DNA of 64,000 nucleotides, taken from IMG/VR virus record IMGVR_UViG_3300009184_000029, positions 1 to 64,000 of that record, one strand, 5' to 3'. The stretch's first letter is position 1. Each line of letters begins with the position of its first letter. Below are positions 13,227 through 33,580 of the stretch, piece by piece. The position numbers and the translations under genes are program-made. The notes under the pieces are model-generated. The model searched no databases and was not told the DNA's origin. It saw only the letters and a program-made list of their open reading frames with translations.

Positions 13227-13592
13227 ATGAAAATTTTAATTGAATCATCGCAGATTGAGAGGTTAAAGAATTATATTACATCATATTTAGATATGATTTT
13301 TATTGCGGATGAACTATATTGGACTTATGACCACGATGAGGATGGTAATCCTGATGAAAATAAGTACATTTTCTATAGAGGAGATTTTTCAAATCAAGAC
13401 ATAGTTTTTGAGTGGATTGGTAAAGATTATTTTGGTTCAGAAGAAATTAAAAAAAATGCCCCAATAGTGTTAATAAACACTGAACAAGTGATTGATTTAG
13501 AATCTATGTTTGGAGATTTTTGGAAACCTGTATTTAAAGAATGGTTTAAGGAGAATTTTAATTTAGATGTTAAAACTGTAAATAAAGAATGA
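13227..13592 (+). CDS. Paralogue-family protein with MKILIESSQ leader
   Basis: Leader class A; ends ...FKEWFKENFNLDVKTV, similar to family C-terminal motif. Confidence 0.65.
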   Translation: MKILIESSQIERLKNYITSYLDMIFIADELYWTYDHDEDGNPDENKYIFYRGDFSNQDIVFEWIGKDYFGSEEIKKNAPIVLINTEQVIDLESMFGDFWKPVFKEWFKENFNLDVKTVNKE

Positions 13593-13631
13593 AATTGTAT
13601 TAAATTTACATGAACCCAACATTTACTAAAA

Positions 13632-13955
13632 ATGATTTTAACTACTGAAATATTAAATAAAATACTCAATTCGGATTTCATCAAAAATATCTATCCGATG
13701 ATTGACCATATTAAATCTCATATTATGTGGGATGGTGATGAAACATATCCGATGTATGATATTACTTTGAAAATATATGTGAATGACCCTGATATGACGG
13801 CTTCCAACATGTATGACAAAGGATTGGACCCACATTATTTAATTGATAAGTATATGATTTTATTGATTAAATTTTTAGGTTCGGCAAGAAATGAAATTTC
13901 TCAAATATATGTTAGTGTTATAGGTCCTGATGGTGAAATAATTTATGGTATATGA
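13632..13955 (+). CDS. Hypothetical protein
   Basis: ORF; IYPMIDHI and DPHYLID motifs. Confidence 0.6.
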   Translation: MILTTEILNKILNSDFIKNIYPMIDHIKSHIMWDGDETYPMYDITLKIYVNDPDMTASNMYDKGLDPHYLIDKYMILLIKFLGSARNEISQIYVSVIGPDGEIIYGI

Positions 13956-13959
13956 TAAT

Positions 13960-14523
13960 ATGAAAGATTTAATAAAAAAAATATTAAAAGAAGAGACGGA
14001 TATTATGGACTCTTTTACTTATTTTGAAACGTCAAAGGGTTCAAAGTATATTATAAATGACAAAGGACAATTAAGAAGATGGAAGTCTTATCACGAAAAC
14101 ACATCAGGTGAAGATATGGGATTACACTCTTGGAGTGATTTATCATTCTTTGTTGACCCATCTTATTATAGTAGTGTAAGTTCTTTTGAACAATTAAATA
14201 CTAACAAAGGATACAAAGTTGCTATAAGTAAAGATGCTGAAGGTAAAATGTTTTACATGATTTTTGATAACAATCAATGGAGACCTGCGAAATGGGAAGA
14301 TGCGTTCCCTACATATGTGAAAAACAATCCTGAATTAAAAAATAAGGTATTAAGTTGGAGATACGTAAGAGAACCTAAAATTGGGTATAATGTTGTTGAT
14401 GTCTCGTTCAAAAAACAAGGTTCAACACAACTATCAAGTTTTCACATAGGTAATACCGTATCAAGAATTGAGGATAGAATACCTGATGATGAAAGAAATT
14501 TATTTACTGGTAAACGTTCTTAA
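13960..14523 (+). CDS. Leader-bearing protein (MKDLIKKILKEE)
   Basis: Leader class B; start reassigned to the leader Met. Confidence 0.65.
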   Translation: MKDLIKKILKEETDIMDSFTYFETSKGSKYIINDKGQLRRWKSYHENTSGEDMGLHSWSDLSFFVDPSYYSSVSSFEQLNTNKGYKVAISKDAEGKMFYMIFDNNQWRPAKWEDAFPTYVKNNPELKNKVLSWRYVREPKIGYNVVDVSFKKQGSTQLSSFHIGNTVSRIEDRIPDDERNLFTGKRS

Positions 14524-14842
14524 CTTTAATGTCACTACGTAAATAATCAGGTGCCGCCCAAATATCAGATACTAAAATTTCTTTACTATTTAATAACCAT
14601 TTCATTATTAAATCTAAACAGTAAGTTTTTTTGATTGAGAAAAACTTACAGATTTCATTAACTAACATATAGTTAACTTCACAAAAACCATCTTCTTTAT
14701 CTATACATATTTGTGAAAATTCATCACCAACTGAATTTACAAAATATATTTTATTTGGACTATCTAAAGTAATTAAATCTTGGTTATTTAAGTATTTTAA
14801 AATAAACGATTCTATTTGTGATTCTTTAATTATTATTCTCAT
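14504..14842 (-). CDS. Paralogue-family protein (MRIIIKESQ)
   Basis: Aligns by eye with 21969, 24100, 24409 (YLNNQD...YFVNS.GDEF.QI...FFS). Confidence 0.75.
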   Translation of the reverse strand: MRIIIKESQIESFILKYLNNQDLITLDSPNKIYFVNSVGDEFSQICIDKEDGFCEVNYMLVNEICKFFSIKKTYCLDLIMKWLLNSKEILVSDIWAAPDYLRSDIKVKNVYQ

Positions 14843-14843
14843 A

Positions 14844-15245
14844 TTATACAAAGACTACACTTTTTATACCCATAACATTATTTTCGGGGAAATATTGACT
14901 ATAAATATCCTGTATTATGTACTTACCATGTATTGACCATAATGGGTGAGGGAGAAATGACTCAAATAATTTATCTAATTCACGACTATAATAAATTTCA
15001 CCATTACGACTTATCTTATCTAAATATCTGTATGGTACGAACAATATTAATATTTTACCATCTGAACCAAGTAGAGCAATTTTATTGTTATCATCTTCAT
15101 TATATGATTTAATCATATTTGAGATTAAAGGAATCAGTTTATTACTTAGTTTAGAGTACTGATGCTCATATTCCTTATCACGCCAATCCCTCTCAATTTT
15201 TTCAGAAATTAATTTATATTGTGATTCGGTGATGATGTATTTCAT
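14844..15245 (-). CDS. Leader-bearing protein (MKYIITESQ)
   Basis: Leader class A; TATTTATA 5 nt upstream on minus strand. Confidence 0.7.
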   Translation of the reverse strand: MKYIITESQYKLISEKIERDWRDKEYEHQYSKLSNKLIPLISNMIKSYNEDDNNKIALLGSDGKILILFVPYRYLDKISRNGEIYYSRELDKLFESFLPHPLWSIHGKYIIQDIYSQYFPENNVMGIKSVVFV

Positions 15246-15264
15246 ATGATTATAAATACAAGTA

Positions 15265-15272
15265 TATTTATA
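15265..15272 (+). promoter_or_regulatory. Putative late promoter box TATTTATA (divergent partner at 15251-15258 on minus strand)
   Basis: Each box lies 5 nt from the ATG of its gene (15278 plus, 15245 minus). Confidence 0.6.
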
Positions 15273-15277
15273 ATAGT

Positions 15278-15892
15278 ATGAACCTAAAGGAATCCATAAG
15301 AAGAATATTAAAAGAAGAAAGGAATGTTAAAAACACATTAGTGAAACTTATTGATGAGTTTGGTATTGAACAAGCCTCCAAAATTACCGCGATTTCTATC
15401 ACAAAATTAGTTCAACTATCTGATGTAAAAATTAATAATGTAATTGCTAATAAACTATTAGTTGAAAATTTAAACAAGGGTAAATTAAAAGATACCTATA
15501 AACAATTCAAGATAGAATCAAGTATAAATGATGTTTTTTATTGGCAAGGTGAATTACAAACAGGACACTATACTGATAAATACACTGAATCAATTACAGC
15601 AATGGCGACACCATTTTGGGATGGTGAAGATTATACTCCTGTTGAGATTGAGTGGTTTACTCTATTGGACAGAAGTAAACCAAATGAAGTGAAGATGGTT
15701 GTTGAGACAGAGGGTTATGGAAGTTTTTACCAAACATTTAAAGATAAAACAAGTTTTGATAGTGTAGAAGAGTTATTTAATTGGTATGAAAAAGTTTATT
15801 TACCTGGTGTATATAACATAATAATGCACTTATTACCTGAAGTGCATATTTTTATTGATGAAAAATTAGATGAGGATAGAAGAGACAATTAA
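15278..15892 (+). CDS. Leader-bearing protein (MNLKESIRRILKEE)
   Basis: Leader class B; body resembles 24774. Confidence 0.7.
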   Translation: MNLKESIRRILKEERNVKNTLVKLIDEFGIEQASKITAISITKLVQLSDVKINNVIANKLLVENLNKGKLKDTYKQFKIESSINDVFYWQGELQTGHYTDKYTESITAMATPFWDGEDYTPVEIEWFTLLDRSKPNEVKMVVETEGYGSFYQTFKDKTSFDSVEELFNWYEKVYLPGVYNIIMHLLPEVHIFIDEKLDEDRRDN

Positions 15893-16316: not shown

Positions 16317-16400
16317 ATTAATATGAAACTACAAGATAGGATTATACAAATTTACAATAAAAGAGAGTGGACTTAGGACCGCTGTAGTTTAGGCTACATT

Positions 16401-16433: not shown

Positions 16434-16445
16434 CATTTGAACAAG

Positions 16446-16453: not shown

Positions 16454-16458
16454 ATAAA

Positions 16459-21302: not shown

Positions 21303-21602
21303 TTAATCAATAATCAATAAATTCTTAAATTCAAAACCTGTCTTACTCTCAACCCAATCTCCGATAATATTCATCGTTTCACCTCTATCTAAACTAAAAA
21401 AGGAGGATATCGTTTTTACAAAATCTTTTTTTATAAAACAATATGTTTGTTTGAAGGTGGATATTATGATTTCACGGTTTTCAATATTATAATTGTTCCA
21501 AAAGTGATAATCACCATCATTGTTTGTAACATAAAAGTTTTGTATATTAAGATAACGAAAGATTACTTTCTCTAACTGTGATTCTGTTATCAAGTATTTC
21601 AT
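21303..21602 (-). CDS. Paralogue-family protein (MKYLITESQ)
   Basis: Leader A; IFRYL...ISSFFSL...IIGDWVE. Confidence 0.75.
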   Translation of the reverse strand: MKYLITESQLEKVIFRYLNIQNFYVTNNDGDYHFWNNYNIENREIIISTFKQTYCFIKKDFVKTISSFFSLDRGETMNIIGDWVESKTGFEFKNLLIID

Positions 21603-21968: not shown

Positions 21969-22301
21969 TTAATTAGACGGAATCTGCATCCACTCAGATT
22001 TAATATTATTGGCCCACAAACAAAAATCAATATCTACCTTTAAGGTCTCCCCAACCCATCTACCGATAGTTTCCCTAGCATCATAACCTTGCATAGAAAA
22101 AAAAGAAGCAACCTCACCAATTAATCCTGTATATATGACACATTTACTATCCTTTTTAAAATATCTAATCTGAGCATATTCATCACCTTCTGAATTTACA
22201 AAGTATACACCATCACCCTTCTCAATCTGAATGAAGTCCTGATTATCCAAGTACTTAAAGATTATTCTATCTAATTGTGATTCTGTAATTAAGTATTTCA
22301 T
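21969..22301 (-). CDS. Paralogue-family protein (MKYLITESQ)
   Basis: Close paralogue of 24409; ends WV+12aa+10aa+MQIPSN. Confidence 0.8.
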   Translation of the reverse strand: MKYLITESQLDRIIFKYLDNQDFIQIEKGDGVYFVNSEGDEYAQIRYFKKDSKCVIYTGLIGEVASFFSMQGYDARETIGRWVGETLKVDIDFCLWANNIKSEWMQIPSN

Positions 22302-22587: not shown

Positions 22588-22689
22588 TATATATAAATAC
22601 AAAGATAGGGACAAAGTTGAACTATATATATTGGGTTAATAATTTCATAAGAATATGATAATATGGTTTGTTCTTTACTTTCTATACTT

Positions 22690-23400
22690 ATGGAAATGGA
22701 ACTATCAAAGTTATTAACCATTGTTATACCTTGTAAGAACGAGGGGATAACTATCAATCAAACTTTATCGATATTAAATTTCCAAAATGGTATTGATGGT
22801 GTTAAGGTTATTGTTTCCGATTCTTCGGATGATGGAACAACATATCATTTGGAGAACAGAAACAGGGACTATTTCAATCTTGACATCATTCAGGGTGGGT
22901 TACCTAGCAAAGCAAGAAATAATGGAGCAGAACGAGCTGAAACTCCGTTTGTATTGTTTATGGACGCCGACATGATGATACTTGATACAAACTTACTTCA
23001 GGAGTGTATGGAGATGATGAGAAGAGAAAGGTTAGATTTGTTGACAACAAAGGTAAGAACAACAAACGGAAAATACAATTATGTGTTCAGAACATTTGAT
23101 TTGATTCAGGGGATAACAAGATATATCACACCATTTTGTTTAGGTGGGTTTATGTTAATGAGAAAGTCAACATTCATAACACTAAACGGATTTGATGAAG
23201 AGGCACAGGTTGCTGAGGATTACTTACTATCAAAACAGATAAAGACAAATAGATTTAAGGTATATAGAAAAACCATATTCACATTACCAAGAAGGTTTGA
23301 GAGTAAGGGATTATGGTATATGACAAAGTTAATGATAATGTCATTCCTTAACAGAAATAACAAGGAGTTTTTCTCCGACCACAATTCATATTGGAAATGA
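22690..23400 (+). CDS. Family 2 glycosyltransferase
   Basis: TIVIPCKNE, VIVSDSSDD, KARNNGA, VLFMDAD, GGFML, AED. Confidence 0.9.
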   Translation: MEMELSKLLTIVIPCKNEGITINQTLSILNFQNGIDGVKVIVSDSSDDGTTYHLENRNRDYFNLDIIQGGLPSKARNNGAERAETPFVLFMDADMMILDTNLLQECMEMMRRERLDLLTTKVRTTNGKYNYVFRTFDLIQGITRYITPFCLGGFMLMRKSTFITLNGFDEEAQVAEDYLLSKQIKTNRFKVYRKTIFTLPRRFESKGLWYMTKLMIMSFLNRNNKEFFSDHNSYWK

Positions 23401-24107
23401 GATACAGAACAATTATAATGAGTGATTTACATCTTGGCGCAAAACAATCACAGACGGACAAGATAATAAAGTTCTTGGAAGAAAACCAAACGGACAAGTT
23501 AATACTAAACGGAGATATCATAGATGGTTGGGCACTCAAAGGTAGTGGTAAGTGGACAAAGGATTGCACCAAGATATTCAGGAAGTTTATGAAGATGTCG
23601 GAGAAGGATACAAAGGTAATTTATATAAGGGGAAACCACGATGACTTCCTAAAAGATTTCATTCCGTTTAAGTTAAACAATATAAGGATTGTAAGGAAGT
23701 ATGTACATGAAGGAATGGACGGAAGAACATACTTTTGTTTTCACGGGGATGTATTGGATTTCGTTATAATGGAAGCAAGATGGTTGGCAGTAATCGGTGG
23801 ATGGTCATATGATATTGTCATTAAGTTTAATACTCTATACAACAAAATAAGAAAGTGGTTTAACTTACCATATCATTCACTGGCAAATACAATAAAACAA
23901 TCTGTTAAAGGGGCGATTAACTTTGTATCTGATTTCGAAGAAAACGCGAAAGGTTTAACAAAACAGAAGGGATATGATGTTGCGGTGTGTGGACATATTC
24001 ATCACCCGAAGTTAGAGAATGACTATATGAATTCAGGAGACTTTTGTGAGAACTCTACATGTCTTGTAGAAGATTATAATGGGGAGTGGAAAATAATTAC
24101 TATATAA
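23391..24107 (+). CDS. UDP-2,3-diacylglucosamine hydrolase-like metallophosphoesterase (LpxH-like)
   Basis: SDLHLG, LNGDIIDGW, RGNHDD, FHGD, CGHIHHP, YMNSGD. Confidence 0.85.
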   Translation: MEMRYRTIIMSDLHLGAKQSQTDKIIKFLEENQTDKLILNGDIIDGWALKGSGKWTKDCTKIFRKFMKMSEKDTKVIYIRGNHDDFLKDFIPFKLNNIRIVRKYVHEGMDGRTYFCFHGDVLDFVIMEARWLAVIGGWSYDIVIKFNTLYNKIRKWFNLPYHSLANTIKQSVKGAINFVSDFEENAKGLTKQKGYDVAVCGHIHHPKLENDYMNSGDFCENSTCLVEDYNGEWKIITI

Positions 24108-24396
24108 TTATAACTTCTTTAACTCTTCTATCCAAAGTATTCTCAACCCATCTAGCGATAACATATTTAGCATTATCAAATTCTATAGAGAAGAAATTTT
24201 TAATCTCATCAATTAACTCAAAACTTATTACACAGTCACCACTTCTAAAGTATTGGATTAATGAGTCCTTATATTCATCACCCTCTGAATTAACGAAGTA
24301 TATTGTATTTCCTTTTTTAATCTGAATAAAGTCCTGATTGTTCAAGTATATGAAGATTACTCTATCTAATTGTGATTCTGTGATTAAGTATTTCAT
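24100..24396 (-). CDS. Paralogue-family protein (MKYLITESQ)
   Basis: Close paralogue of 24409; ends RWVENTLDRRVKEVIII. Confidence 0.8.
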   Translation of the reverse strand: MKYLITESQLDRVIFIYLNNQDFIQIKKGNTIYFVNSEGDEYKDSLIQYFRSGDCVISFELIDEIKNFFSIEFDNAKYVIARWVENTLDRRVKEVIII

Positions 24397-24408
24397 TATT
24401 GATAAATA

Positions 24409-24741
24409 TTAGTTAGATGGTATTCTCAACATATATCCACGGTGGAAAGATACAAAAGGGGTGTCAGTGACCCTCATTTGGAGGGTATTCTCAACCCACC
24501 TACCAATAACTTGTTCAGAATCAGATTCATCCAAAGAAAAGAAGGAAGAAATTTCATCCATTAATTTGTAATATATCCCACACCAACCATCATCTTTATC
24601 ATATCTGATTTGAGCATATTCATCACCTTCTGAATTGGCGAAGTATATATTATCACCCTTTTCTATCGGAATAAAATCTTGGTTGTCAAGATACCTAAAG
24701 ACTATTTTATCTAATTGTGATTCGGTGATAAGATATTTCAT
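24409..24741 (-). CDS. Paralogue-family protein (MKYLITESQ) whose 3' end overlaps a CRISPR-like repeat-spacer unit
   Basis: Ends RWVENTLQMRVTDT-PFVSFHRGYM-LRIPSN. Confidence 0.8.
   Translation of the reverse strand: MKYLITESQLDKIVFRYLDNQDFIPIEKGDNIYFANSEGDEYAQIRYDKDDGWCGIYYKLMDEISSFFSLDESDSEQVIGRWVENTLQMRVTDTPFVSFHRGYMLRIPSN
24413..24495 (+). CRISPR. Minimal repeat-spacer-repeat unit with a type VI-B-like direct repeat (degenerate partial repeat, ~30-nt spacer, full repeat)
   Basis: Full repeat 24460-24495 GGTGTCAGTGACCCTCATTTGGAGGGTATTCTCAAC with ACCCTC/GAGGGT stem; partial repeat ending GGTATTCTCAAC at 24430; intervening spacer 24431-24459/60. Confidence 0.6.
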
Positions 24742-24773: not shown

Positions 24774-25229
24774 ATGAATCTACAAGAAAACGTAAGAAGA
24801 ATATTAAGGGAAGAATACACCGCAAAACAAATGAAGTTATTAACTCTGGCAAGTAAGGTGGGGTTACTAAAGGTAGGGAAAATGCTCGGAGGTGTAGAAG
24901 ACCTTATAAATGTGTTAGGTGATGAGTTCCTTACAACAAACAATAAGATTAAGATTATTAAGGAAATAGTAGAAACAACCGATGATGAATATATTACACT
25001 AATGGACATGAATGAAAATCCAATAGTTCTCAAGGATGAAGACGGTAAACTTTCACAAATAGAAATGATATATAGAGAAGATGTTGCAGTGTTCCATTAT
25101 GGTGGATATAAATACTCACAAGATTTAGGTGAAAGTTATATGTCTTATGAAGAACTACCAAAATATGTATTAGATGATATTTTTGATATGGTATTAGATT
25201 TCTATACAGGTACTTTAGAGAATAACTAA
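24774..25229 (+). CDS. Leader-bearing protein (MNLQENVRRILREE)
   Basis: Leader B; GLLKVGKMLGG segment resembles those in 15278 and 19597. Confidence 0.7.
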   Translation: MNLQENVRRILREEYTAKQMKLLTLASKVGLLKVGKMLGGVEDLINVLGDEFLTTNNKIKIIKEIVETTDDEYITLMDMNENPIVLKDEDGKLSQIEMIYREDVAVFHYGGYKYSQDLGESYMSYEELPKYVLDDIFDMVLDFYTGTLENN

Positions 25230-25688
25230 TTATTGATTTAATACCTCTTCCACCCCTCTTGTGAAGGGTCCAAAATATGATTCCGTTGTAGATACCTTAT
25301 GATTTAATACCTCTTCCACCTTCCAAGGAACACGAACTTTAACATCGCACGTTGTGGATACCTTATGATTTAAGACCTCTTCCACCAAATGGGCATCATT
25401 GAAAAACGCATCACCAGTTGTGGATACCTTATGATTTAATACCTCTTCCACCCAAGAAGATAGAACAGGACTAAAATCACCTGAACTCATAGAGAATATT
25501 TTAAAAAACGAATTAAAAAAATCATATCTCCACCATAAAGTACCTGACTTATCAAGTTCGAAGTACCAATGTTTATTATCCCTATTAATGAACCATATTG
25601 ACCCATTATAAGGAATAATCTCACAATCACCCAACTCTTTATATAGGTGTTTAAAAATAACTTGTTTAAATCTATCTGTAATAACCAT
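25230..25688 (-). CDS. Paralogue-family protein with in-frame CRISPR-like repeat tail (VEEVLNHKVSTT x3 + VEEVLNQ)
   Basis: N-terminal ~80 aa align by eye to the family; host-type promoter upstream. Confidence 0.75.
   Translation of the reverse strand: MVITDRFKQVIFKHLYKELGDCEIIPYNGSIWFINRDNKHWYFELDKSGTLWWRYDFFNSFFKIFSMSSGDFSPVLSSWVEEVLNHKVSTTGDAFFNDAHLVEEVLNHKVSTTCDVKVRVPWKVEEVLNHKVSTTESYFGPFTRGVEEVLNQ
25234..25452. CRISPR. CRISPR-like mini-array: 3 full 36-bp repeats + 1 truncated repeat, three unrelated 30-bp spacers
   Basis: Repeat GTTGT(G/A)GATACCTTATGATTTAA(T/G)ACCTCTTCCACC at 25285, 25351, 25417; partial at 25234-25254; spacers 25255-25284, 25321-25350, 25387-25416. Confidence 0.7.
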
Positions 25689-25692
25689 AGTA

Positions 25693-25700
25693 CAAATATA
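25693..25700 (-). promoter_or_regulatory. Bacteroidota -7 box TATATTTG
   Basis: 4 nt upstream of ATG 25688. Confidence 0.65.
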
Positions 25701-25925
25701 GTAAGAAATTAAGAAATAAACAAACTCATTCCCCCATCCCCACTTTCAGTGGTCGTTCCATTCCCCTTCGGGTCATTACACTAATGGGTACATTCATTTG
25801 TTTACTTCTTAATTTCCCCCATTGTATGAATCTATAATAAACGTACAACACTAATCTATAATAATCCCCCATAATGAAAGACACATACTATGAAGGGACA
25901 TATAGTTATACTGTTAATGGTATTG

Positions 25926-26059
25926 TACCCCATCGGGATAATGAAATACCCTAAAGGGTATGTTACACGATAAGAATATACCGTTAGGGTATAATACCGA
26001 TAGGTATAAAATGAAGGGGACAATACGAAACATATCTGTTATGTCAGGTTTAACCTGAC
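25926..26059. repeat. Cluster of short inverted repeats in a long non-coding region
   Basis: ATACCCTAAAGGGTAT (25946), TATACCGTTAGGGTATA (25977), ATACCGATAGGTAT (25994), GTCAGGTTTAACCTGAC (26043). Confidence 0.7.
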
Positions 26060-26520
26060 TATAGTGATATGAAACATATGTCCCACAATTTACCACCATA
26101 ATAATTGTCCATATCATGTGTCTATATATGAAAGGGAAATCTTAGAAACCCCGTTGAAGGACACTATAATACACTATTTTCGTTGAAGATTGTAACGACT
26201 AAAGTCTGTCCACGCCACTTTGTTAGTGTAATCTATTTTTCTCTGGAAAATGTATATAGTAAAAAAAACCCTTCTCACACTATCATGAGGACCATTTTTT
26301 TCACTTTTCATATAATCAAAAACACCCCTCACATATATGTCAGTGGGAAAAAGTGGGAACATTTACCTATGGATAATATACACATATTAACCTATATTTA
26401 TTATAGTTGTAGTGTCTAAAAGTGGTCAAGGGGATTAACCCTTAACGCGAGCTCGACTGACATTTTGACAAAATCAAATTTTTTAACAAATAAAGTTATT
26501 AACAATTTCCCCCTGACAGT

Positions 26521-26784
26521 ATGACAAACAACAATTCCATACATGACACGTTAAGAAACACGAGGGTTTTAACTGACACTTTAAGGGACCATAAGGTGGT
26601 TTACTTATATTATAATGATGAGAAGGTGGGAAGGATGGAGTTTGGGATTGTCCATTCCCCTCTCCAAGGGAATCAGTATGTGTTAAGAAGTTATAAGATA
26701 GAGAGTGACTACTCAGAGTTATTCAAGGGTGAGGAGAGTCCCATTATAACTCTGACCACCTATGTTAGGACACTAATGGTTTAA
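26521..26784 (+). CDS. Hypothetical protein
   Basis: ORF converging on 26765. Confidence 0.45.
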   Translation: MTNNNSIHDTLRNTRVLTDTLRDHKVVYLYYNDEKVGRMEFGIVHSPLQGNQYVLRSYKIESDYSELFKGEESPIITLTTYVRTLMV

Positions 26785-27157
26785 CTTGTTTCCACACCAC
26801 ACTTTTGTATTTTACTTCATTACCTCTTGCTTCCACTTCGAAGGGTGAGTTGTGGTATCCATTTTTATTAACAGATGATGCGTAGTTTTTCTTCAATCCC
26901 TTTTGTATGTGATGGGTGTATTCATGGATGACGGTACGAATAAACTTATCAACATTAACACAGGTCGATGGGTTGATGATGATGGTGTAATCATAGTCGT
27001 ACTGACCATAACAATTTGTTAACCCATTTCTAATTTTTAACTTAGGGGTTGGTTTGTTCCCGTGACCTAATATTTCACGAGTCACCTTAATGGTTTCCAT
27101 CCCCAAGGTTCTTAGTTGTTTAACACTATATGTATTTAAGTTATCTTTGAGTTTCAT
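26765..27157 (-). CDS. SprT-like zinc metallopeptidase
   Basis: CYGQY...IIINP...TVIHEYTHHIQ HExxH; SPFEVEAR. Confidence 0.75.
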   Translation of the reverse strand: MKLKDNLNTYSVKQLRTLGMETIKVTREILGHGNKPTPKLKIRNGLTNCYGQYDYDYTIIINPSTCVNVDKFIRTVIHEYTHHIQKGLKKNYASSVNKNGYHNSPFEVEARGNEVKYKSVVWKQVKPLVS

Positions 27158-27158
27158 A

Positions 27159-27578
27159 TTAGTCGATATAATTAAAAGTTAATTTACCCATGAAGTCAGA
27201 GTTATGTCTTGGACATGCGATGCCGGCCATCTTGAAGAACAAGGGGATTTGAGTTTGGTTAATCATTCTGTCGAAGTAAACTGATGCTGCACGTTTTCTT
27301 CTTTTGTAGAAATCCATTTGGGTGCCTCTCCAAGAATATTTGCTTGGGATTTTATCTTCACTGAAGTGGAACCCTGTCTTCTTCATGGTCACCTCGATGT
27401 TTAACACACGGCTATACTTCTGCTCGTTCCAATTGTATTTGTCAGTCTCCCCAACTGATACAATACGAATTGACACCTCACCGAAGCCATGCCATTCTTC
27501 TTTCATGATTAGGGTACCTTTCTTCTTTAAGAACTTCTTAACTAAGTTGGTCGATAATTTATCTTGGGTGATTGTCAT
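27159..27578 (-). CDS. Hypothetical protein (MTITQDK...)
   Basis: Start reassigned downstream of TATATTTG box at 27604-27611. Confidence 0.6.
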   Translation of the reverse strand: MTITQDKLSTNLVKKFLKKKGTLIMKEEWHGFGEVSIRIVSVGETDKYNWNEQKYSRVLNIEVTMKKTGFHFSEDKIPSKYSWRGTQMDFYKRRKRAASVYFDRMINQTQIPLFFKMAGIACPRHNSDFMGKLTFNYID

Positions 27579-27603
27579 AGTGGTGTGGTGTTTAATTGTT
27601 TTA

Positions 27604-27611
27604 CAAATATA
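27604..27611 (-). promoter_or_regulatory. Bacteroidota -7 box TATATTTG
   Basis: Consensus match upstream of 27578. Confidence 0.6.
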
Positions 27612-27948
27612 CAACAATTTTCTTCCCCCACAAAGAAAACTTCCTTTTTTTTTAAAGGCAGGTTGGAGTACACACTCCAAGCATTGTTGGTGCCAGCCCT
27701 TTATCCCCTCATCGTTATAAGGTACGTTAGGGCTAAGTTAAAACAAAAATAATTAATAAAAAATTAGGATACTAACTTTCTTCGCCGTAACTTTGTGTTG
27801 ACGCTCTTCTTATAAAAAAAAATATATAAGGCACCATGCTAAGTTACGGCGGAAATATCAAACCCCCAAATAAAGTTATGAACAACAATCAAATTGTTTC
27901 CCTCATTAATAAGGGAAACATTTATTTGGTGGGGGAATAATGTTGCCG

Positions 27949-27956
27949 TATATTTG
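27949..27956 (+). promoter_or_regulatory. Bacteroidota -7 box TATATTTG
   Basis: 4 nt before ATG 27961. Confidence 0.65.
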
Positions 27957-27960
27957 TGGT

Positions 27961-28239
27961 ATGAATAAAACATTCGACGACTTAGTATTTGTCCCCCATT
28001 TTAATAATATGGGTGGAGTACAATGTAAGATTGATACTGACAACGGTTACACCATTAGTATCGTTGGTGGTCCCTCACTATATGGTGATGGTGTTAATAC
28101 ATTCGAGGTGGCAGTTTGGAAGAGTGATGGTGACATGGGTTGGGTTAGACTATCCCCTAACGATGATGTATTAGGATACAGAAGTAAAGATGAGGTCCTA
28201 CAGATTATATCTGACATAGAGTCGGGGGTATATACATAA
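27961..28239 (+). CDS. Conserved hypothetical phage protein
   Basis: NGYTISIV...LYGDG..TFEVAV...DDVLGY motifs; start after promoter. Confidence 0.7.
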   Translation: MNKTFDDLVFVPHFNNMGGVQCKIDTDNGYTISIVGGPSLYGDGVNTFEVAVWKSDGDMGWVRLSPNDDVLGYRSKDEVLQIISDIESGVYT

Positions 28240-28255
28240 ACTTATTAACACGTAG

Positions 28256-28420
28256 GGTGGGGGGACTGTGGATATCTTTATCCCCATACGGTAGGTAGTG
28301 GCACACCCCCATATAATACCGTAGACCCCCCACCCCTGACATATGGTCATACCATACCCCCTCCCCCTGGGGTATCCCCCCCTTATATGACATATTTTCC
28401 GATTTTAGGGGGGTTAATCC
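28256..28420. other. Non-coding C-tract/G-tract cluster
   Basis: Numerous runs of 4-7 C on the plus strand with flanking G runs, unlike the rest of the window. Confidence 0.7.
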
Positions 28421-28536
28421 CGTGAATAAAATTTTATGGAATTTTTTTCTATAATGGGACCCCCTCTTTTAAAAAGGTGGGTAAAGTAAAAAATAAATTT
28501 TTGGAAAATTTTTGTATTTATTATTAAATTAGTAAT

Positions 28537-28863
28537 ATGAAAAAAGTTGTAAGATTAACTGAAAGAGATTTAATAAGACTTGTGGAAAATGTGGGTTCAG
28601 TCTATCTTAATAGGAGAACCAAATATATAGATGAAATTCTTGATGAGGTAATATCTGAAATAACTAATGGTGAATTTCATTTTGAGGATTATGATGATTA
28701 TAAGTCGGAGGTTATTTGGACAACTTTGTCTACGATGGAGTATGACGAGGGACGTGATTTACCAAAAGAATATATTGAGGATTATTTTTCATTTATGGAG
28801 AGACCTGAGTTTATTGATAAAATTAAGAGGGGATATTCTATGTTTAAGAAGAGTAGAAAATAA
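28537..28863 (+). CDS. Leader-bearing protein (MKKVVRLTERDL)
   Basis: Leader class C; GTATTTATT upstream. Confidence 0.7.
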   Translation: MKKVVRLTERDLIRLVENVGSVYLNRRTKYIDEILDEVISEITNGEFHFEDYDDYKSEVIWTTLSTMEYDEGRDLPKEYIEDYFSFMERPEFIDKIKRGYSMFKKSRK

Positions 28864-29185: not shown

Positions 29186-29187
29186 GA

Positions 29188-29384: not shown

Positions 29385-29891
29385 ATGGAACCTGAAGAAG
29401 ACATAATGAATATTTTAGGAGATAATGTTTTGTTAATATCGGATAATACTGCTATAACCAACTCCACCTATCGTTTAGAAAGAGGAGGACTTACAGTTAA
29501 TCCGTATATTAATAATGATTATCATATTCACCGTACTCATTCGGACATCCCCAATAAGGATGGTGAAATGGTTTTTCCTGAGTTATTGTTGAATTTAGTT
29601 AAGAAGAACAACTCAGGTATTCGTTCAATCTTGGTTGATAGTTATAGGAACGTTGCAAGATTTAGTCTTACGGATTTTGATACTGTTCCTGATTATCTTG
29701 TTTTTTTGGAGGTTAAGTATAATTGGGATTCTAATAATGTACTATCCCCCGAGAAGTTAACAGAATATATTAATACATCATTCTCTATGATGTATACTGA
29801 TATTAATTTCGTTAAGTTTCAGGTTAAAAAAATCAATATTGAAAAACGTAATTATGAGAAGGAGTTCTTTAATATGTTTATGAAAAAATAA
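29385..29891 (+). CDS. Hypothetical protein
   Basis: 168-aa ORF. Confidence 0.6.
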   Translation: MEPEEDIMNILGDNVLLISDNTAITNSTYRLERGGLTVNPYINNDYHIHRTHSDIPNKDGEMVFPELLLNLVKKNNSGIRSILVDSYRNVARFSLTDFDTVPDYLVFLEVKYNWDSNNVLSPEKLTEYINTSFSMMYTDINFVKFQVKKINIEKRNYEKEFFNMFMKK

Positions 29892-29934
29892 TTTTTTTTC
29901 CGTTGTTCCAATCCCCCCTACCCCCTTTTTTTTT
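29892..29934 (+). repeat. Intergenic motif copy 1 (T-run CGTTGTTCCAATCCCCCCTACCCCC T-run)
   Basis: Near-identical copy at 31026-31067. Confidence 0.7.
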
Positions 29935-30662: not shown

Positions 30663-30702
30663 CATTTAACCCCCTTTTTATTTTTAACGTATTTATTGTA
30701 GT

Positions 30703-31014
30703 ATGAAATATATTATCACCGAGTCTCAGAATTTACAAATGAGGAAAGTTAATTTCTTGAAGAACTATATTCAGAACTTATTATCTAAGTACAAATGGTT
30801 TAAAGGTGATGTTAAGATAGATGTAACGACTTGGGATGCATCAAATAAGACATATCCTTTATATAATATTATACTAAATACAGGTGGTCGTAGTTATCAT
30901 GCTTATGATGAGGGTTTAGATATTGAGAATAATATTAATACCATGTTTGGTTTATTATTTCCTAAAGATGAAAACGGAGATTCTAGTGCGGTATGGGATG
31001 TTCTTTTTGTATAA
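30703..31014 (+). CDS. Leader-bearing protein (MKYIITESQ)
   Basis: Leader A; GTATTTATT upstream. Confidence 0.7.
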   Translation: MKYIITESQNLQMRKVNFLKNYIQNLLSKYKWFKGDVKIDVTTWDASNKTYPLYNIILNTGGRSYHAYDEGLDIENNINTMFGLLFPKDENGDSSAVWDVLFV

Positions 31015-31025
31015 AATAAAAAATA

Positions 31026-31067
31026 TTTTTTTTCGTCGTCCAATTCCCCCCTACCCCCTTTTTTTTT
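31026..31067 (+). repeat. Intergenic motif copy 2
   Basis: T-run CGTCGTCCAATTCCCCCCTACCCC T-run. Confidence 0.7.
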
Positions 31068-31089
31068 ATTTTATGATATATTTATTATT

Positions 31090-31449: not shown

Positions 31450-31450
31450 T

Positions 31451-31957
31451 ATGAAAAAAGTTGTAAGATTAACTGAAAGAGATTTAATGAAAATTGTTAA
31501 AAGGGTCATTAACGAAAACGACGATATGATGGATAGTGATGACTACCAACCTCAATATGACAGAGATATGGAATCAGGTAAAGATACGATTCGTATTCCA
31601 ATGGAATATAGTGGAGTTAGAATGGAACTTGGAAGTCGTCCAACACCTGAAGATATTATATCTGCTTATAATGATACAGTTGAGGAAGGGATACCTCTTG
31701 TTAGTTATTCTGATGGTGTATTTTATAATGAGGATGATAATGAGCTTCCTGTTGATTCAGTACTTGATGAATTGAATTATGCGATTGTTGGTGAAGAGGA
31801 AATTGATTATGACGATGAGGAATATGAAGATGACATGCCGTCATACAAAACTAAATGGAGAATGCCATCTGATGATGATAATAATAATCGTCAAAGCTTT
31901 AAGGAAACCGGCAGACACCTTGGTTGGTTTAATCCCAAACGTTGGAATGATATGTAA
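31451..31957 (+). CDS. Leader-bearing acidic protein (MKKVVRLTERDL)
   Basis: Start reassigned; leader C followed by VINE. Confidence 0.7.
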   Translation: MKKVVRLTERDLMKIVKRVINENDDMMDSDDYQPQYDRDMESGKDTIRIPMEYSGVRMELGSRPTPEDIISAYNDTVEEGIPLVSYSDGVFYNEDDNELPVDSVLDELNYAIVGEEEIDYDDEEYEDDMPSYKTKWRMPSDDDNNNRQSFKETGRHLGWFNPKRWNDM

Positions 31958-32004
31958 AACATATTAAATTATACAACCCCTCCAATAACAGTATTATTGG
32001 ACTG

Positions 32005-32030
32005 ACCCCTTGGATTTCCCAAGGGGTTTC
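32005..32030 (+). terminator. Rho-independent terminator
   Basis: ACCCCTTGG-ATTTC-CCAAGGGGTTTC; same family as 28884. Confidence 0.7.
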
Positions 32031-32053
32031 TTGTTTTTATGGACAACTTTATA

Positions 32054-32061
32054 TATCTTTG
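32054..32061 (+). promoter_or_regulatory. Bacteroidota -7 box TATCTTTG
   Basis: Upstream of ATG 32088; a second TATCTTTG at 32297-32304 precedes 32309. Confidence 0.6.
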
Positions 32062-32087
32062 TAAGGTTATATAAAAAAACACACATT

Positions 32088-32291
32088 ATGAAAAAAGTAT
32101 TATTTTATTTCTTCATTTTTATTCTCTTCATTTTATCAGGTGTTTACTTGTCATCATGTAATACACAGAAGGGGTATAATTATTCTCAACACCAAAAGAA
32201 GTCTCAACAGATGCATAGACAGACACAGAGGGTTAACAAACATAGTCACGACCAACTTAATCATAAGTGTTCACCAAAGAAACGTAGATAA
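32088..32291 (+). CDS. Small predicted lipoprotein
   Basis: MKK + hydrophobic stretch + LSSC lipobox; basic His/Gln-rich body. Confidence 0.65.
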   Translation: MKKVLFYFFIFILFILSGVYLSSCNTQKGYNYSQHQKKSQQMHRQTQRVNKHSHDQLNHKCSPKKRR

Positions 32292-32308
32292 GATAGTATC
32301 TTTGTTAA

Positions 32309-32641
32309 ATGGTTAATAAGGTTATTGATTTATATGTAAAAAATTTCTTGGTCTATCATTATGATGGATGGTATTGGATTATTAATCCAAATACTAAAGA
32401 ATGGGTTGTTAACGTTGCTGATAGTGGTTATACTTTTTTTAGTAGGGATTTTTGGACAACGTTTTCTAAGTTCTACCCATCAAAGGATTTAACTAAAGAT
32501 ATTCATAATTGGGTTAGTTATAAATTGGGAGTCCCTATTGGAAAACATTGTCATCCTGATTATGTTCCTCATGAATATAATTGGAAGGATGAGTTTGACG
32601 AAAGTGTGATTGATGAAGTGATTAATAATGGGGTTAAATAA
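32309..32641 (+). CDS. Distant paralogue-family protein
   Basis: YWIINP...SGYTFFSRDFW..FSKF...IHNWV resembles the N-domain of 25230. Confidence 0.55.
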   Translation: MVNKVIDLYVKNFLVYHYDGWYWIINPNTKEWVVNVADSGYTFFSRDFWTTFSKFYPSKDLTKDIHNWVSYKLGVPIGKHCHPDYVPHEYNWKDEFDESVIDEVINNGVK

Positions 32642-32686
32642 AAATTTTTTTATTTTATAATATATTTATATATAAATTAAAATATT

Positions 32687-33112
32687 ATGAAAAAAGTTGT
32701 TAGACTAACAGAATCGGATTTAATTAAATTGGTTAAAAGAGTTATTAGAGAAGAAGAGGGTGCAAATGACCCAGGTGACCCATCCTACAGCCGTTTGGCT
32801 GAAGAACTTTCAAATAAGGTAAGAAATTTATTTTTACCAACCTCTAAATTTTGGGCAGATTATCAAGGAACTATCAATGATGATGAGGAAGGGGCTGTAG
32901 CAGCTTTTGAGTCTTGGTGGAATACAAATGTAGCACCTCATATGAGTAAATTTAGTGGAGATAATGCTAAAAGTTTGGATACGGCATTTAAACAAATTAA
33001 AGAGGCTCTTTTAGGTGATACGTCAAATGATACAGTTAGTTGGGTTATTTATGTCAAAACTATGGATGGTAGGATAGACCAACGTCATTTTGAGGTTGAT
33101 ACCGACTTCTAA
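32687..33112 (+). CDS. Leader-bearing protein (MKKVVRLTESDL...VIREEE)
   Basis: Leader C. Confidence 0.7.
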   Translation: MKKVVRLTESDLIKLVKRVIREEEGANDPGDPSYSRLAEELSNKVRNLFLPTSKFWADYQGTINDDEEGAVAAFESWWNTNVAPHMSKFSGDNAKSLDTAFKQIKEALLGDTSNDTVSWVIYVKTMDGRIDQRHFEVDTDF

Positions 33113-33128
33113 TTAAAGAAATAATATT

Positions 33129-33157
33129 AAACCCCATTCTTATGAATGGGGTTTTTT
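33129..33157 (+). terminator. Rho-independent terminator
   Basis: AAACCCCATTC-TTAT-GAATGGGGTTTTTT. Confidence 0.85.
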
Positions 33158-33181
33158 ATTTGGTAAGGTATTTATTATAAT

Positions 33182-33580
33182 ATGAAGTATAAAGTAACAA
33201 AAGAACAATATACTAGTTTTGTTAATAGTTTGATTAAGGTTTTTTTCGGTAATGTTAGAACTGCTAAAAGCCGTACATTTGATAGAATGGAATTGCTCAT
33301 TGATGATGAAGAAATTGGGTGGGTTGCTTCTGGTATAAATCCTGATTTATCCGATAATTGTAAATTTGAACTTATTATTTATACTGACACTCTTAACAAA
33401 ATTAAAAATTTTGCTCCTTTATTTAGAAAAAAGTTATTTGCGAAATTGATGATTGCCCATTTCTCAAAATTATTGAATATGAATATCGATTGTTTTTGGA
33501 TTGATGAAGGTCCGGGATACGGTGAAGAGGAAATATTTACTCACAGAATTAAAAATAAGAAAAAGAAAAAAAAGAAATAA
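33182..33580 (+). CDS. Leader-variant protein (MKYKVTKEQ) with poly-Lys tail
   Basis: GGTATTTATT box; leader A variant. Confidence 0.6.
   Translation: MKYKVTKEQYTSFVNSLIKVFFGNVRTAKSRTFDRMELLIDDEEIGWVASGINPDLSDNCKFELIIYTDTLNKIKNFAPLFRKKLFAKLMIAHFSKLLNMNIDCFWIDEGPGYGEEEIFTHRIKNKKKKKKK

What the first reader, a model, noticed from the sequence alone, without database searches (positions are those of the whole stretch)
13227..33580. Expanded ~100-aa paralogue family whose C-termini look like eroded repeat-spacer units
Seen: 14504, 21303, 21969, 24100, 24409 (close), 25230, 32309, 13227 and possibly 33182 (distant) share a layout of aromatic beta strands (IYFVNS.GDEYAQIRY / IWFINRD.KHWYFEL), a helix (EISSFFSL) and I..WVE..L. 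After the Trp, 21969 and 24409 both run 12 + 10 residues then a short related tail (MQIPSN / LRIPSN) with the same 65-nt period. 24100 and 21303 stop soon after a degenerate repeat. Inference: one family has repeatedly carried, gained or lost array tails. It exists under both promoter classes (leader plus TATTTATA versus leader-free plus TATATTTG), suggesting both virion-delivered and early-expressed versions.
Basis: partly seen in the sequence, partly recalled or inferred. Interest (0 to 1): 0.68.

Follow-up and report, generated by a model that had tools for sequence, protein, structure and literature searches.

The report
Phage genes ending in translated CRISPR arrays
A family of small genes in a freshwater jumbo phage ends in genuine CRISPR-type repeat-spacer arrays, resembling those of the RNA-cutting Cas13b system, that are kept readable as protein, a combination I found no description of.

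Summary
The window is the first 64 kb of a 223-kb phage with no cas gene detected. Six ORFs (14504, 21303, 21969, 24100, 24409, 25230) share an ~80-aa domain; 32309 is a probable distant member; 13227 and 33182 are not members.

The last helix of the domain (W-V-E-x-x-L) is encoded by the first repeat of a CRISPR-type array.
- 25230 has 3 full and 1 truncated 36-nt repeats with three unrelated 30-nt spacers.
- 24409 and 21969 carry a one-spacer mini-array, eroded in 21969. "LRIPSN" is the terminal repeat read one base out of frame.
- 24100 and 21303 keep only a fossil first repeat.

Related phage contigs carry arrays of up to 9 repeats. Spacers turn over at the gene-proximal end and the terminal repeat is truncated. 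The phage repeats are the 36-mers in the genome closest to the Flavobacterium columnare Cas13b (VI-B) repeat. The newest window spacer matches a Bacteroidota chromosomal parB gene at 29 of 30 bases.

Unlike cellular arrays, these stay in frame. All 188 periods are multiples of 3, none of 68 independently retrieved spacers has an in-frame stop, and substitutions are mostly synonymous. Function is inferred, not shown.

The parts
25230..25688 (-). Type A gene: N-terminal domain (aa 1-78) fused in frame to a CRISPR-type array; protein ends VEEVLNQ*
25693..25700 (-). TATATTTG (TAnnTTTG, Bacteroidota -7 type box by my knowledge) 4 nt upstream of the ATG; implies a leaderless or near-leaderless transcript
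   Evidence: the same motif at the same distance in 5 of 250 ORFs, about 0.2 expected
25417..25452 (-). Type A repeat 1 (36 nt); encodes VEEVLNHKVSTT, the C-terminal half of helix alpha3
25387..25416 (-). Spacer 1 (30 nt), gene-proximal and unique to this phage; 29/30 match to a Bacteroidota chromosomal parB gene, antisense to its mRNA
25351..25386 (-). Type A repeat 2
25321..25350 (-). Spacer 2, shared with L003/4/5/7/8/12/14/16/17
25285..25320 (-). Type A repeat 3
25255..25284 (-). Spacer 3, shared trailer-side spacer
25233..25254 (-). Truncated terminal repeat: keeps its 5' 21-22 nt, as the native F. columnare VI-B array keeps 25 nt
24409..24741 (-). Type B gene: N-domain plus one-spacer mini-array; ends ...MLRIPSN*
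24460..24495 (-). Type B repeat 1 with hairpin CCCTC-CAAAT-GAGGG
24431..24459 (-). Type B spacer (29 nt), different in nearly every orthologue
24395..24430 (-). Degenerate terminal type B repeat (first 12-13 nt intact), read in the -1 frame as LRIPSN*; overlaps the upstream region of the 24100 gene
21969..22301 (-). Paralogue with an eroded repeat-spacer-repeat tail (period 65; ends MQIPSN*)
   Evidence: (family D2)
24100..24396 (-). Paralogue with fossil first repeat only (24112-24147; first 11 nt GTTGAGAATAC kept)
21303..21602 (-). Paralogue with fossil first repeat only (first 8 nt kept)
14504..14842 (-). Paralogue with no recognisable repeat left (KWLLNSKEILVSDI...)
32309..32641 (+). Probable distant member without a tail; has the same TAnnTTTG-4-ATG arrangement

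Best explanation
**What it is.** A phage gene family whose 3' end is a cas-less CRISPR array of the type VI-B (Cas13b) kind. The first repeat doubles as the codons for the last helix of an ~80-aa alpha/beta domain, so every further repeat-spacer unit (36 + 30 nt = 22 codons) extends the protein by VEEVLNHKVSTT plus 10 spacer-encoded residues.

**Shown.**
- The domain is a real protein under purifying selection.
- The arrays have identical repeats, unrelated spacers, turnover at the gene-proximal end and a truncated terminal repeat.
- At least one spacer was captured from a bacterial chromosome.
- The arrays are held open and in frame.
- The paralogues in the window form a decay series from live array (25230) through mini-array (24409, 21969) to fossil repeat (24100, 21303, 14504).

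**Inferred.**
- Because no Cas13b gene is detected in the phage, new units are inserted by the host's adaptation enzymes acting in trans, as the VI-B locus of F. columnare borrows the II-C Cas1/Cas2.
- The gene is transcribed early from a Bacteroidota-type promoter as a leaderless mRNA.
- The repeats in that RNA are bound and processed by the host's Cas13b. Cas13b is thereby loaded with phage-supplied guides instead of host guides. This would be a decoy or hijack, analogous to RNA anti-CRISPRs and viral mini-arrays.
- Translation through the array is selected either because it keeps the long transcript from premature termination and decay, or because the tail protein has a function of its own.
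For: **Family and fold.**
- HMM and alignment unite the members.
- AF2 pLDDT is 93.7, with the first repeat inside helix alpha3.
- N-domain dN/dS is 0.1-0.3 with synonymous sites saturated.

**Array nature.**
- 225 repeats were retrieved by a DNA pattern alone, in 17 viral loci. Periods are 179 x 66 and 9 x 138.
- Repeats within an array are identical while spacers are unrelated, also in 9 other repeat dialects.
- Unique spacers sit at the gene-proximal end. Shared spacers and degenerate repeats sit at the far end.
- The truncated terminal repeat keeps its 5' part, exactly as in native F. columnare/F. covae arrays next to Cas13b (NF038190, E 7e-235).

**VI-B likeness.**
- The geometry is 36 + 30 nt.
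- Of 445,586 36-mers in the phage genome, the four closest to the F. columnare VI-B repeat (23-24/36) are the three type A repeats and type B repeat 1. Similarity to the II-C repeat is at background.
- Type B keeps the CCCTY-loop-RAGGG hairpin.

**Protospacer.** A 29/30 match in a Bacteroidota parA-parB-DUF5683-dapB-lepB fragment, antisense to parB.

**No Cas13b detected** in the phage or in 5 relatives.

**Translation.**
- 0 of 68 distinct spacers has an in-frame stop, against 19-41 in the other five frames and a mean of 32.7 in shuffles.
- Native arrays: 9-12 of 22 spacers have a stop in a given frame, and only 13 of 22 are 30 nt long.
- Every array lies in one ORF.
- Orthologous spacer changes are 17 synonymous to 14 nonsynonymous, against 23% expected (p 1e-4).
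- Repeat changes are 88 synonymous to 117 nonsynonymous, against 22:77 possible.

**Nucleotide-level constraint on the repeat.** Codons for the same amino acid are identical in 83% of cases in the first repeat against 58% in the N-domain.

**Published context.** F. columnare VI-B arrays acquire spacers in trans and often from the host chromosome (PMC8092290).
Against: - No bacterial genome among 185,579 species carries a repeat sharing the 23 positions common to type A and the F. columnare repeat, other than F. columnare and F. covae themselves. The exact phage repeat is absent from those genomes. The presumed host Cas13b and its matching repeat are therefore unidentified.
- Type A repeats and their dialects fold weakly (-2 to -7 kcal/mol) and not at homologous positions.
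- A decoy has no obvious need to be translated, yet the frame is strictly kept even where no gene follows on the same strand.
- Spacer-encoded peptides show amino-acid-level constraint, which points to a protein function the decoy model does not explain.
- Only one of seven spacers tested has a protospacer.
- The source bacterium has about 50% GC against 31% for the phage, so it may not be the host.
- The phage genome is only about 76% complete by CheckV's estimate, so an effector could lie in the missing part.
Confidence: 0.45

Rival explanations
1. The protein is the product. CRISPR-type spacer integration is used, or tolerated and then selected, as a way to build and diversify a hypervariable C-terminal peptide array: N-domain followed by n units of a 12-aa constant segment plus a 10-aa variable segment. 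The RNA plays no guide or decoy role.
For: - The frame is kept strictly: 0/68 in-frame stops and all periods multiples of 3.
- Spacers show a synonymous excess.
- C-terminal ends are conserved after the last repeat: VEEVLNQ...LNENPTE...NNKKENESNG.
- The second codon position of the first variable residue is A-rich.
- The repeat motif V-E-x-V-L-N-x-x-V-x-T-T is kept across dialects as protein.
- Type A variable segments are more protein-like in composition than type B ones.
Against: - AF2 gives no confident fold for the tail (pLDDT about 35).
- Variable segments are close to random-translation composition, rich in R, H and W.
- Synonymous sites of the repeat are more conserved than protein coding requires.
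- Type B tails end by frameshift in the terminal repeat and sometimes by stops inside the spacer.
- No known way for the phage to direct which peptides are added.
Confidence: 0.22
2. Integration-site decoy at the DNA level. The many leader-repeat junctions on replicating phage DNA soak up the host's Cas1-Cas2 integration events, so that fewer spacers reach the host's own array. The in-frame gene tail is simply a place where 66-bp insertions are tolerated.
For: - Several arrays stand in tandem per genome, up to 4.
- Spacers include host-chromosome DNA.
- VI-B arrays accept spacers in trans (PMC8092290).
- No viral protospacers were found for six gene-proximal spacers.
Against: - It does not explain why frameshifting 29- or 31-nt spacers and stop-containing spacers are absent from type A arrays, nor why spacer peptides are constrained.
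- It does not explain conservation of old trailer spacers across contigs.
Confidence: 0.12
3. An ordinary protein with tandem 22-aa repeats. The likeness to CRISPR is coincidental (a 'false CRISPR' in a coding region), and the variable parts arose by point mutation or recombination.
For: - CRISPR finders are known to call arrays inside repeat-protein genes (PMC5294841).
- The arrays are ORFs under coding constraint.
- No cas genes were detected.
Against: - Repeats are identical at the DNA level within arrays, while the 30-nt inserts share no similarity.
- Turnover is polarised and the terminal repeat is truncated as in native arrays.
- The repeats rank top in similarity to a Cas13b repeat.
- Orthologues at 72-92% identity have wholly different inserts.
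- There is a 29/30 protospacer in a bacterial parB gene.
Confidence: 0.06
4. Mini-arrays for competition between phages. The spacers direct the host effector against rival phages (superinfection exclusion), as proposed for mini-arrays of archaeal viruses.
For: - The arrays are cas-less, virus-borne, and show spacer turnover.
- One spacer has a 21/30 antisense match to a gene of G000 and G004.
Against: - Six gene-proximal spacers have no match in 2.9 million viral contigs outside the arrays.
- There are no matches in the phage's own genome, five related phage genomes or cultured phages.
- The one clear protospacer is bacterial and chromosomal.
Confidence: 0.08

Closest known systems
Native type VI-B (Cas13b) CRISPR arrays of Flavobacterium columnare and F. 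covae
   Same: - 36-nt repeat with ~30-nt spacers.
- Repeat 23-24/36 identical, including the 3' GGTATCTACAAC found in some phage repeat copies.
- GKTGG start and ACAAC end.
- Truncated terminal repeat that keeps its 5' part.
- The variable end lies on the upstream side.
- Spacers are taken from bacterial chromosomes as well as phages.
   Different: - No Cas13b detected nearby or elsewhere in the phage (76% complete).
- The 'leader' is a protein-coding domain.
- Spacers are all exactly 30 nt, against 29-31 in native arrays.
- No in-frame stops.
- The repeat hairpin is weaker in type A.
- Phage spacers are not T-rich as the native ones are.
RNA anti-CRISPRs (Racrs, solitary repeat units) and viral mini-arrays (Camara-Wilpert et al. 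2023, PMC10651486)
   Same: Virus-borne CRISPR repeats without cas genes. The mini-array of 24409 (full repeat, spacer, partial repeat) has the layout that paper calls a mini-array.
   Different: - That survey found units for all CRISPR types except type VI, and it masked predicted ORFs before searching, so it could not have seen these.
- Racrs are non-coding with their own promoter and at least 90% identical to a host repeat. Here the repeats are coding, and no near-identical bacterial repeat was found.
CRISPR arrays and CRISPR-Cas systems of huge or jumbo phages (reviewed in PMC11656645)
   Same: Jumbo-phage genomes from metagenomes carrying arrays, some lacking the adaptation or interference genes.
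   Different: Those arrays are described as ordinary non-coding arrays. None is reported as an in-frame extension of a protein gene, and type VI is not among the types listed for mobile elements in the passages read.
'False CRISPRs' inside repeat-protein genes (Zhang and Ye 2017, PMC5294841)
   Same: A regularly spaced repeat inside an ORF that array finders would call.
   Different: By my knowledge, false CRISPRs have diverged repeats and mutually similar 'spacers'. Here the repeats are identical, the spacers are unrelated, turnover is polarised and a protospacer exists.
Diversity-generating retroelements and other hypervariable phage protein tails
   Same: Hypervariation confined to the C-terminal part of a phage protein.
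   Different: No template repeat, no adenine-specific pattern, and no reverse transcriptase seen. Variation here is by whole 66-nt cassettes.

Membership tests
CRISPR array (generic) | Near-identical direct repeats of 23-47 nt separated by unique spacers of similar, constant length | tested here: met
   36-nt repeats with 0-2 mismatches, 30-nt unrelated spacers, 188 periods
CRISPR array (generic) | Polarised growth: new spacers at one end, shared old spacers and a degenerate repeat at the other | tested here: met
   Unique spacers at the gene-proximal end in the window, L003 and L005. Common trailer spacers and degenerate or truncated last repeats
CRISPR array (generic) | Spacers derived from other genomes (protospacers) | tested here: met
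   1 of 7 spacers tested: 29/30 in a Bacteroidota parB gene. Six others have no hit in viral contigs
CRISPR array (generic) | Non-coding; transcribed as pre-crRNA from a leader | tested here: not met
   Every array is the in-frame 3' part of an ORF, with 0/68 in-frame stops. Transcription seen only as presence in two lake metatranscriptome libraries
CRISPR array (generic) | cas genes in the same genome | tested here: not met
   No Cas13b (NF038190) in G000 or five relatives. Large ORFs gave PolB, RNR, ClpB and SbcC or nothing. The genome is 76% complete, and Cas1 and Cas2 were not searched by profile
Type VI-B (Cas13b) array | 36-nt repeat, ~30-nt spacers, repeat of the GTTG...CAAC class | tested here: met
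   23-24/36 to the F. columnare repeat, the top 4 of 445,586 genomic 36-mers. Dialect L035 reads GTTGGAG...ACAACAAC
Type VI-B (Cas13b) array | Conserved repeat hairpin | tested here: inconclusive
   Type B and its L036 dialect have a 6-7-bp hairpin with two compensatory pairs by eye. Type A dialects fold weakly and inconsistently
Type VI-B (Cas13b) array | Cognate Cas13b that binds and processes the repeat | not testable with these tools
   Host unknown. No bacterial array with this repeat in 185,579 species genomes
Racr / solitary repeat unit | At least 90% identity to a repeat of the host's CRISPR locus | tested here: not met
   Best bacterial repeat found is 64-67% identical
Racr / solitary repeat unit | Small non-coding RNA that inhibits the Cas effector | not testable with these tools
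   The repeats lie inside ORFs.
Viral mini-array for superinfection exclusion | Spacers match related or co-occurring viruses | tested here: not met
   No match in own genome, five relatives, cultured phages or IMG/VR. Only a 21/30 partial match
Any curated protein family (Pfam, PHROGs, NCBIfam) or solved fold | Significant profile or structural match | tested here: not met
   No hits. Foldseek PDB best E 0.2 and VIA-align best Z 4.8. Only uncharacterised viral proteins in BFVD and the ESM Atlas

The most novel reading that the evidence does not exclude
CRISPR-type spacer integration has been co-opted by a large group of freshwater phages to write new 22-codon cassettes into a protein-coding gene. 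The 'array' would then be at once a record of captured DNA and a translated, selected, hypervariable protein tail. This would be a protein-diversifying use of CRISPR adaptation, possibly alongside a Cas13b decoy role for the same RNA.
Probability: 0.3. Interest if true: 0.95.

Novelty: new variant of a known kind. Interest (0 to 1): 0.86.

Why it matters
**A gap in earlier surveys.** Virus-borne CRISPR repeats are known as decoys and mini-arrays. None had been reported for type VI, and surveys mask ORFs before searching, so this whole class would have been invisible. It comprises 830 family clusters at 50% identity, seen almost only in viruses.

**A new combination.** If the arrays do engage host Cas13b, they would be the first RNA-level counter-defence against an RNA-targeting CRISPR system. 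Either way, a CRISPR array held under selection as a translated reading frame fused to a conserved protein domain is a combination I found in no text read here.

**Open questions it makes testable.**
- How orphan arrays acquire spacers in trans.
- How array transcripts escape premature termination.
- Whether spacer integration can create coding sequence.

**Host clues.** The spacers are also a possible handle on the unknown hosts of abundant freshwater jumbo phages. One already points to a Bacteroidota chromosome.

Tried and rejected
- **Family scans.** Pfam, PHROGs and NCBIfam scans of all claimed members found nothing.
- **Cultured phages.** Megablast and blastn of the region and of three arrays against 50,697 cultured-phage records found no match or only chance matches.
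- **Bacterial repeats.** The exact phage repeat has 0 hits in 185,579 bacterial or archaeal species genomes. A degenerate repeat pattern found only F. columnare, F. covae and one chance hit inside an IclR-type regulator gene of a Ratteibacteria MAG.
- **Cas13b.** Profile search in the phage and five relatives found none.
- **Protospacers.** Searches in the phage's own genome, locus flanks and five related genomes found none except a 21/30 partial match. Six spacers searched in IMG/VR hit only the arrays themselves. 28 spacers searched against 401 Bacteroidota genomes gave three weak hits, all in the N-domain coding part and none in a spacer.
- **Full-length tail structure.** pLDDT 42, uninformative.
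- **Fold searches of the N-domain.** Nothing above noise in the PDB.
- **RNA families.** An Rfam search of 25600-28600 at a permissive threshold gave only a sub-threshold chance hit. The sigma-70 and terminator scan was not enriched over shuffles.
- **Ascertainment caveat.** The 0/32 in-frame-stop result for the nine extra dialects was reached through called ORFs. I do not count it as independent of the ORF property. The 0/68 result was retrieved by DNA pattern alone.
- **Genetic code.** No other genetic code was used.

Full report
**Context.**
- The window is the first 64 kb of a single 222,829-bp contig with 30.7% GC. The tools class it as a virus record, 76% complete by CheckV's estimate.
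- It encodes PolB, ribonucleotide reductase, a ClpB-like ATPase, an SbcC-like protein, a tmRNA and a tRNA-Arg.
- Runs that hold the stretch are mainly freshwater metagenomes.
- The region 13-34 kb is packed with small ORFs that share a few N-terminal motifs (MKYLITESQL, MNLQE.I.R..., MKKVVRLTESDL) across otherwise unrelated proteins.

**Is the family real?**
- An HMM from 14504, 21303, 21969, 24100 and 24409 scores each at E <= 3e-43. It pulls in 25230..25688 over its full length at E 2.6e-6 among 435 ORFs of the genome.
- Other ORFs that score (22309, 34170, 21599, 30703, 14844) match only the first 11-36 residues, that is, the shared N-terminal motif.
- Against a 32-sequence alignment of the domain (A1):
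  - 32309 aligns over 70 columns (hhalign 72%, E 3.4e-5).
  - 13227 aligns only over its last 24 residues (19%).
  - 33182 does not match (2%), and neither does 17346 (7%).
- AlphaFold2 on A1 gives a confident model (pLDDT 93.7, pTM 0.84): helix, four strands, two helices. The conserved W-V-E-x-x-L lies in the last helix.
- Between array-bearing genes the synonymous sites of the domain are saturated (pS 0.5-0.8) while pN is 0.2-0.3, giving dN/dS 0.1-0.3. It is a real protein.
- It has no Pfam, PHROGs or NCBIfam family and no solved structural relative. The only structural look-alikes are uncharacterised viral proteins.
- A profile search of 1.84 billion representatives finds 830 clusters at E <= 1e-3 and 338 at E <= 1e-10.

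**What follows the Trp codon.**
- In 25230 the sequence from the last base of TGG is GGTGGAAGAGGTATTAAATCATAAGGTATCCACAAC. It occurs three times at exactly 66 nt with three unrelated 30-nt spacers, then a fourth copy that breaks off after 21-22 nt.
- In 24409 a different repeat, GTTGAGAATACCCTCCAAATGAGGGTCACTGACACC, is followed by 29 nt and a restart of 12-13 nt.
- 21969 is an eroded copy of the same unit with the same 65-nt period.
- 24100 keeps 11 nt of the repeat start and 21303 keeps 8 nt. 14504 keeps none.
It is the terminal repeat read one base out of frame because the spacer is 29 nt: TTG AGA ATA CCC TCC AAA TGA.

**Are these CRISPR arrays?** A DNA pattern of the 25230 repeat, with no reference to ORFs, finds 17 loci in IMG/VR contigs of up to 240 kb and none in 185,579 bacterial and archaeal species genomes.
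- Those loci hold 225 repeats. All 188 within-array periods are 66 (179) or 138 (9).
- Arrays differ between contigs by whole units.
- Lineage-specific spacers sit at the gene-proximal end: the window, L003 and L005 each have their own. A common set in conserved order sits further down.
- The last repeats are degenerate.
- Nine further repeat 'dialects' fetched through family proteins show the same picture: 36-nt repeats identical within an array, 30-nt unrelated spacers, period 66.
- Among the 120 closest orthologues of 24409 (71-100% identical), the ten residues after WVENTLQMRVT.T are different in almost every one. Arrays of one, two or three spacers occur.
- Finally, a 24-mer from the window's gene-proximal spacer (25387-25416) hits one non-array metagenome contig (L045).
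  - The full spacer matches 29/30, inside a parB gene of a parA-parB-DUF5683-dapB-lepB fragment whose best relatives are Bacteroidota.
  - The array-sense strand is antisense to parB.
  - By my estimate an exact 24-mer plus 5 of 6 flanking bases is expected by chance about 1e-5 times in a collection of this size.
  - So at least this spacer was captured from a bacterial chromosome.

**Which CRISPR type?**
- The F. columnare CRISPR-2 repeat is published in PMC5395568. It is found here next to a 1,226-aa ORF that matches the Cas13b equivalog NF038190 at E 7e-235. It is 36 nt long with 29-31-nt spacers.
- Scanning all 445,586 36-mers of the phage genome against it, the four best (23-24/36) are exactly the three type A repeats and type B repeat 1 in reverse complement. 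The co-resident II-C repeat scores at background.
- Native arrays end in a truncated repeat that keeps its 5' 25 nt. The phage arrays do the same in the same orientation.
- Type B has the CCCTY-loop-RAGGG hairpin of the native repeat.
- Type A and its dialects fold weakly and inconsistently, so the structural criterion is inconclusive.
- No Cas13b is detectable in the phage or in five related contigs.
- Published work shows that the F. columnare VI-B locus, which lacks cas1 and cas2, acquires spacers in trans through the II-C machinery and takes many from the host chromosome (PMC8092290). That fits a cas-less phage array carrying a parB spacer.
- TAnnTTTG lies exactly 4 nt before the ATG of 25230, 32309 and three other ORFs (about 0.2 expected). 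By my knowledge this is the Bacteroidota -7 box, which again points to a Bacteroidota host.

**The unexpected part: the arrays are reading frames.**
- Every array in L001-L017 lies wholly inside one ORF. That ORF starts with the family domain and stops 52-103 nt after the last repeat. Up to four such genes stand in tandem with overlapping stop and start.
- Of 68 distinct spacers retrieved by DNA pattern, none has a stop in the ORF frame. By contrast:
  - the other five frames have 19-41;
  - 1,000 shuffles give a mean of 32.7 and never fewer than 19;
  - in native F. columnare/F. covae arrays 9-12 of 22 spacers have a stop in any given frame, and only 13 of 22 are 30 nt long.
- Orthologous spacers differ by 17 synonymous and 14 nonsynonymous changes where 23% synonymous is expected (p 1.2e-4). 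A transition bias would weaken this but not remove it.
- Repeat variants show 88 synonymous to 117 nonsynonymous codon changes against 22:77 possible.
- At the same time the repeat is constrained as nucleic acid. Codons for the same residue are identical in 83% of comparisons in the first repeat against 58% in the domain.
- Variable segments of type B are compositionally like random translation (r 0.74 with random, 0.27 with the proteome). Those of type A are intermediate.
- Type B tails usually end by the frameshift described above and sometimes by a stop in the spacer, so strict openness is a property of the type A lineage.
- AF2 gives no confident structure for a nine-unit tail.

**Expression.** Two lake metatranscriptome libraries hold contigs identical to 25255-25405, 25480-25670 and 25198-25348. 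This shows presence only. Contigs give no strand, ends or level.

**Interpretation.** The series in the window reads as decay of one architecture:
- live array (25230);
- one-spacer mini-array (24409);
- eroded mini-array (21969);
- fossil first repeat kept only as codons (24100, 21303);
- nothing left (14504).

I commit to the following. These are cas-less VI-B-like arrays fused in frame to an early phage gene. They are extended by host adaptation enzymes, and their RNA engages host Cas13b as a decoy or hijack. Translation is selected for transcript integrity or for a function of the tail protein.

The first three statements rest on the evidence above. The Cas13b engagement and the reason for translation are inferences. 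The main rival is that the protein tail itself is the selected product.

The 'ordinary repeat protein' reading is contradicted by the protospacer, the polarity and the identical repeats. The inter-phage competition reading is weakened by six negative viral searches.

**Novelty.**
- The Racr survey found solitary repeats for all types except type VI, and it masked ORFs before searching.
- The 2024 review of CRISPR in mobile elements mentions no in-frame or type VI viral arrays in the passages read.
- Full-text searches for translated or in-frame arrays returned nothing relevant.

I therefore rate this a new variant of a known kind (virus-borne cas-less arrays), with a substantial chance that it is something further removed.

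Noticed in passing
window 59001-59394 (-) and 56830-56906 (+): A full-length tmRNA (Rfam RF00023, 133 bits) and a tRNA-Arg(TCT) are encoded by the phage. Only the universal 3' end of the tmRNA matches Bacteroidota genomes.
   Followed up: partly
window 12000-35000, e.g. 15278, 17983, 19597, 24774 (MNLQE...), 28537, 31090, 32687 (MKKVVRLTE...), 14844, 22309, 30703, 34170 (MKY.ITESQ...): At least three N-terminal peptide motifs of 10-20 residues are shared, also at the DNA level (repeat families D3-D8), by otherwise unrelated small ORFs. Each contains a hydrophobic-x-E pattern (LITE, RLTE, VLRE). I recall this pattern from capsid-targeting propeptides of T4-like phages. Untested.
   Followed up: partly
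window 25689-26760 (-), with a sigma-70-like site at 26429-26400: About 1 kb upstream of the array gene has no ORF, a higher GC content and short palindromes (ATACCCTTTAGGGTAT). It is conserved at about 77% in related contigs together with the next 1.1 kb. No Rfam family matches.
   Followed up: partly
window 29875-29934 and 31008-31067: A 60-nt intergenic element ending in CCAATCCCCCCTACCCCC followed by a T-run occurs twice at 80% identity.
   Followed up: no
G000 69490-69519 (L018), inside ORF 68853-70601 (+): A spacer of related phages (L008, L013) matches this gene at 21/30, antisense to it. The same place matches in the contig that carries the spacer (G004). This is either chance or an old, diverged protospacer.
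   Followed up: partly
window 22663-24107 (+): A glycosyltransferase-family-2-like ORF and a metallophosphatase-like ORF lie between family members. The same pair (Pfam Glycos_transf_2, Metallophos) flanks an array gene in L033 and L034, so the neighbourhood is conserved.
   Followed up: no
window 48653-48807 and 47945-48014: Tandem repeats of 54 nt (2.9 copies, 89% matches) and 36 nt (1.9 copies), unrelated to the arrays.
   Followed up: no
window 26765-27157 (-): A 130-aa ORF with an HEYTHH motif (zinc-peptidase-like) lies in the conserved block upstream of the array gene.
   Followed up: no
L030 2729-2764 (Ratteibacteria MAG contig): The degenerate repeat pattern hit once inside an IclR-type regulator gene, where it encodes ...ILNLKVSTTH..., the helix-turn-helix region. 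It resembles the repeat peptide VEEVLNHKVSTT. Probably chance.
   Followed up: partly
L045 (metagenome contig Ga0169931_10022613): The source of the window's newest spacer is a ~50% GC Bacteroidota fragment (parA-parB-DUF5683-dapB-lepB, plus a collagen-repeat/Lcl protein). That is far from the phage's 31% GC, so it may or may not be the host.
   Followed up: partly
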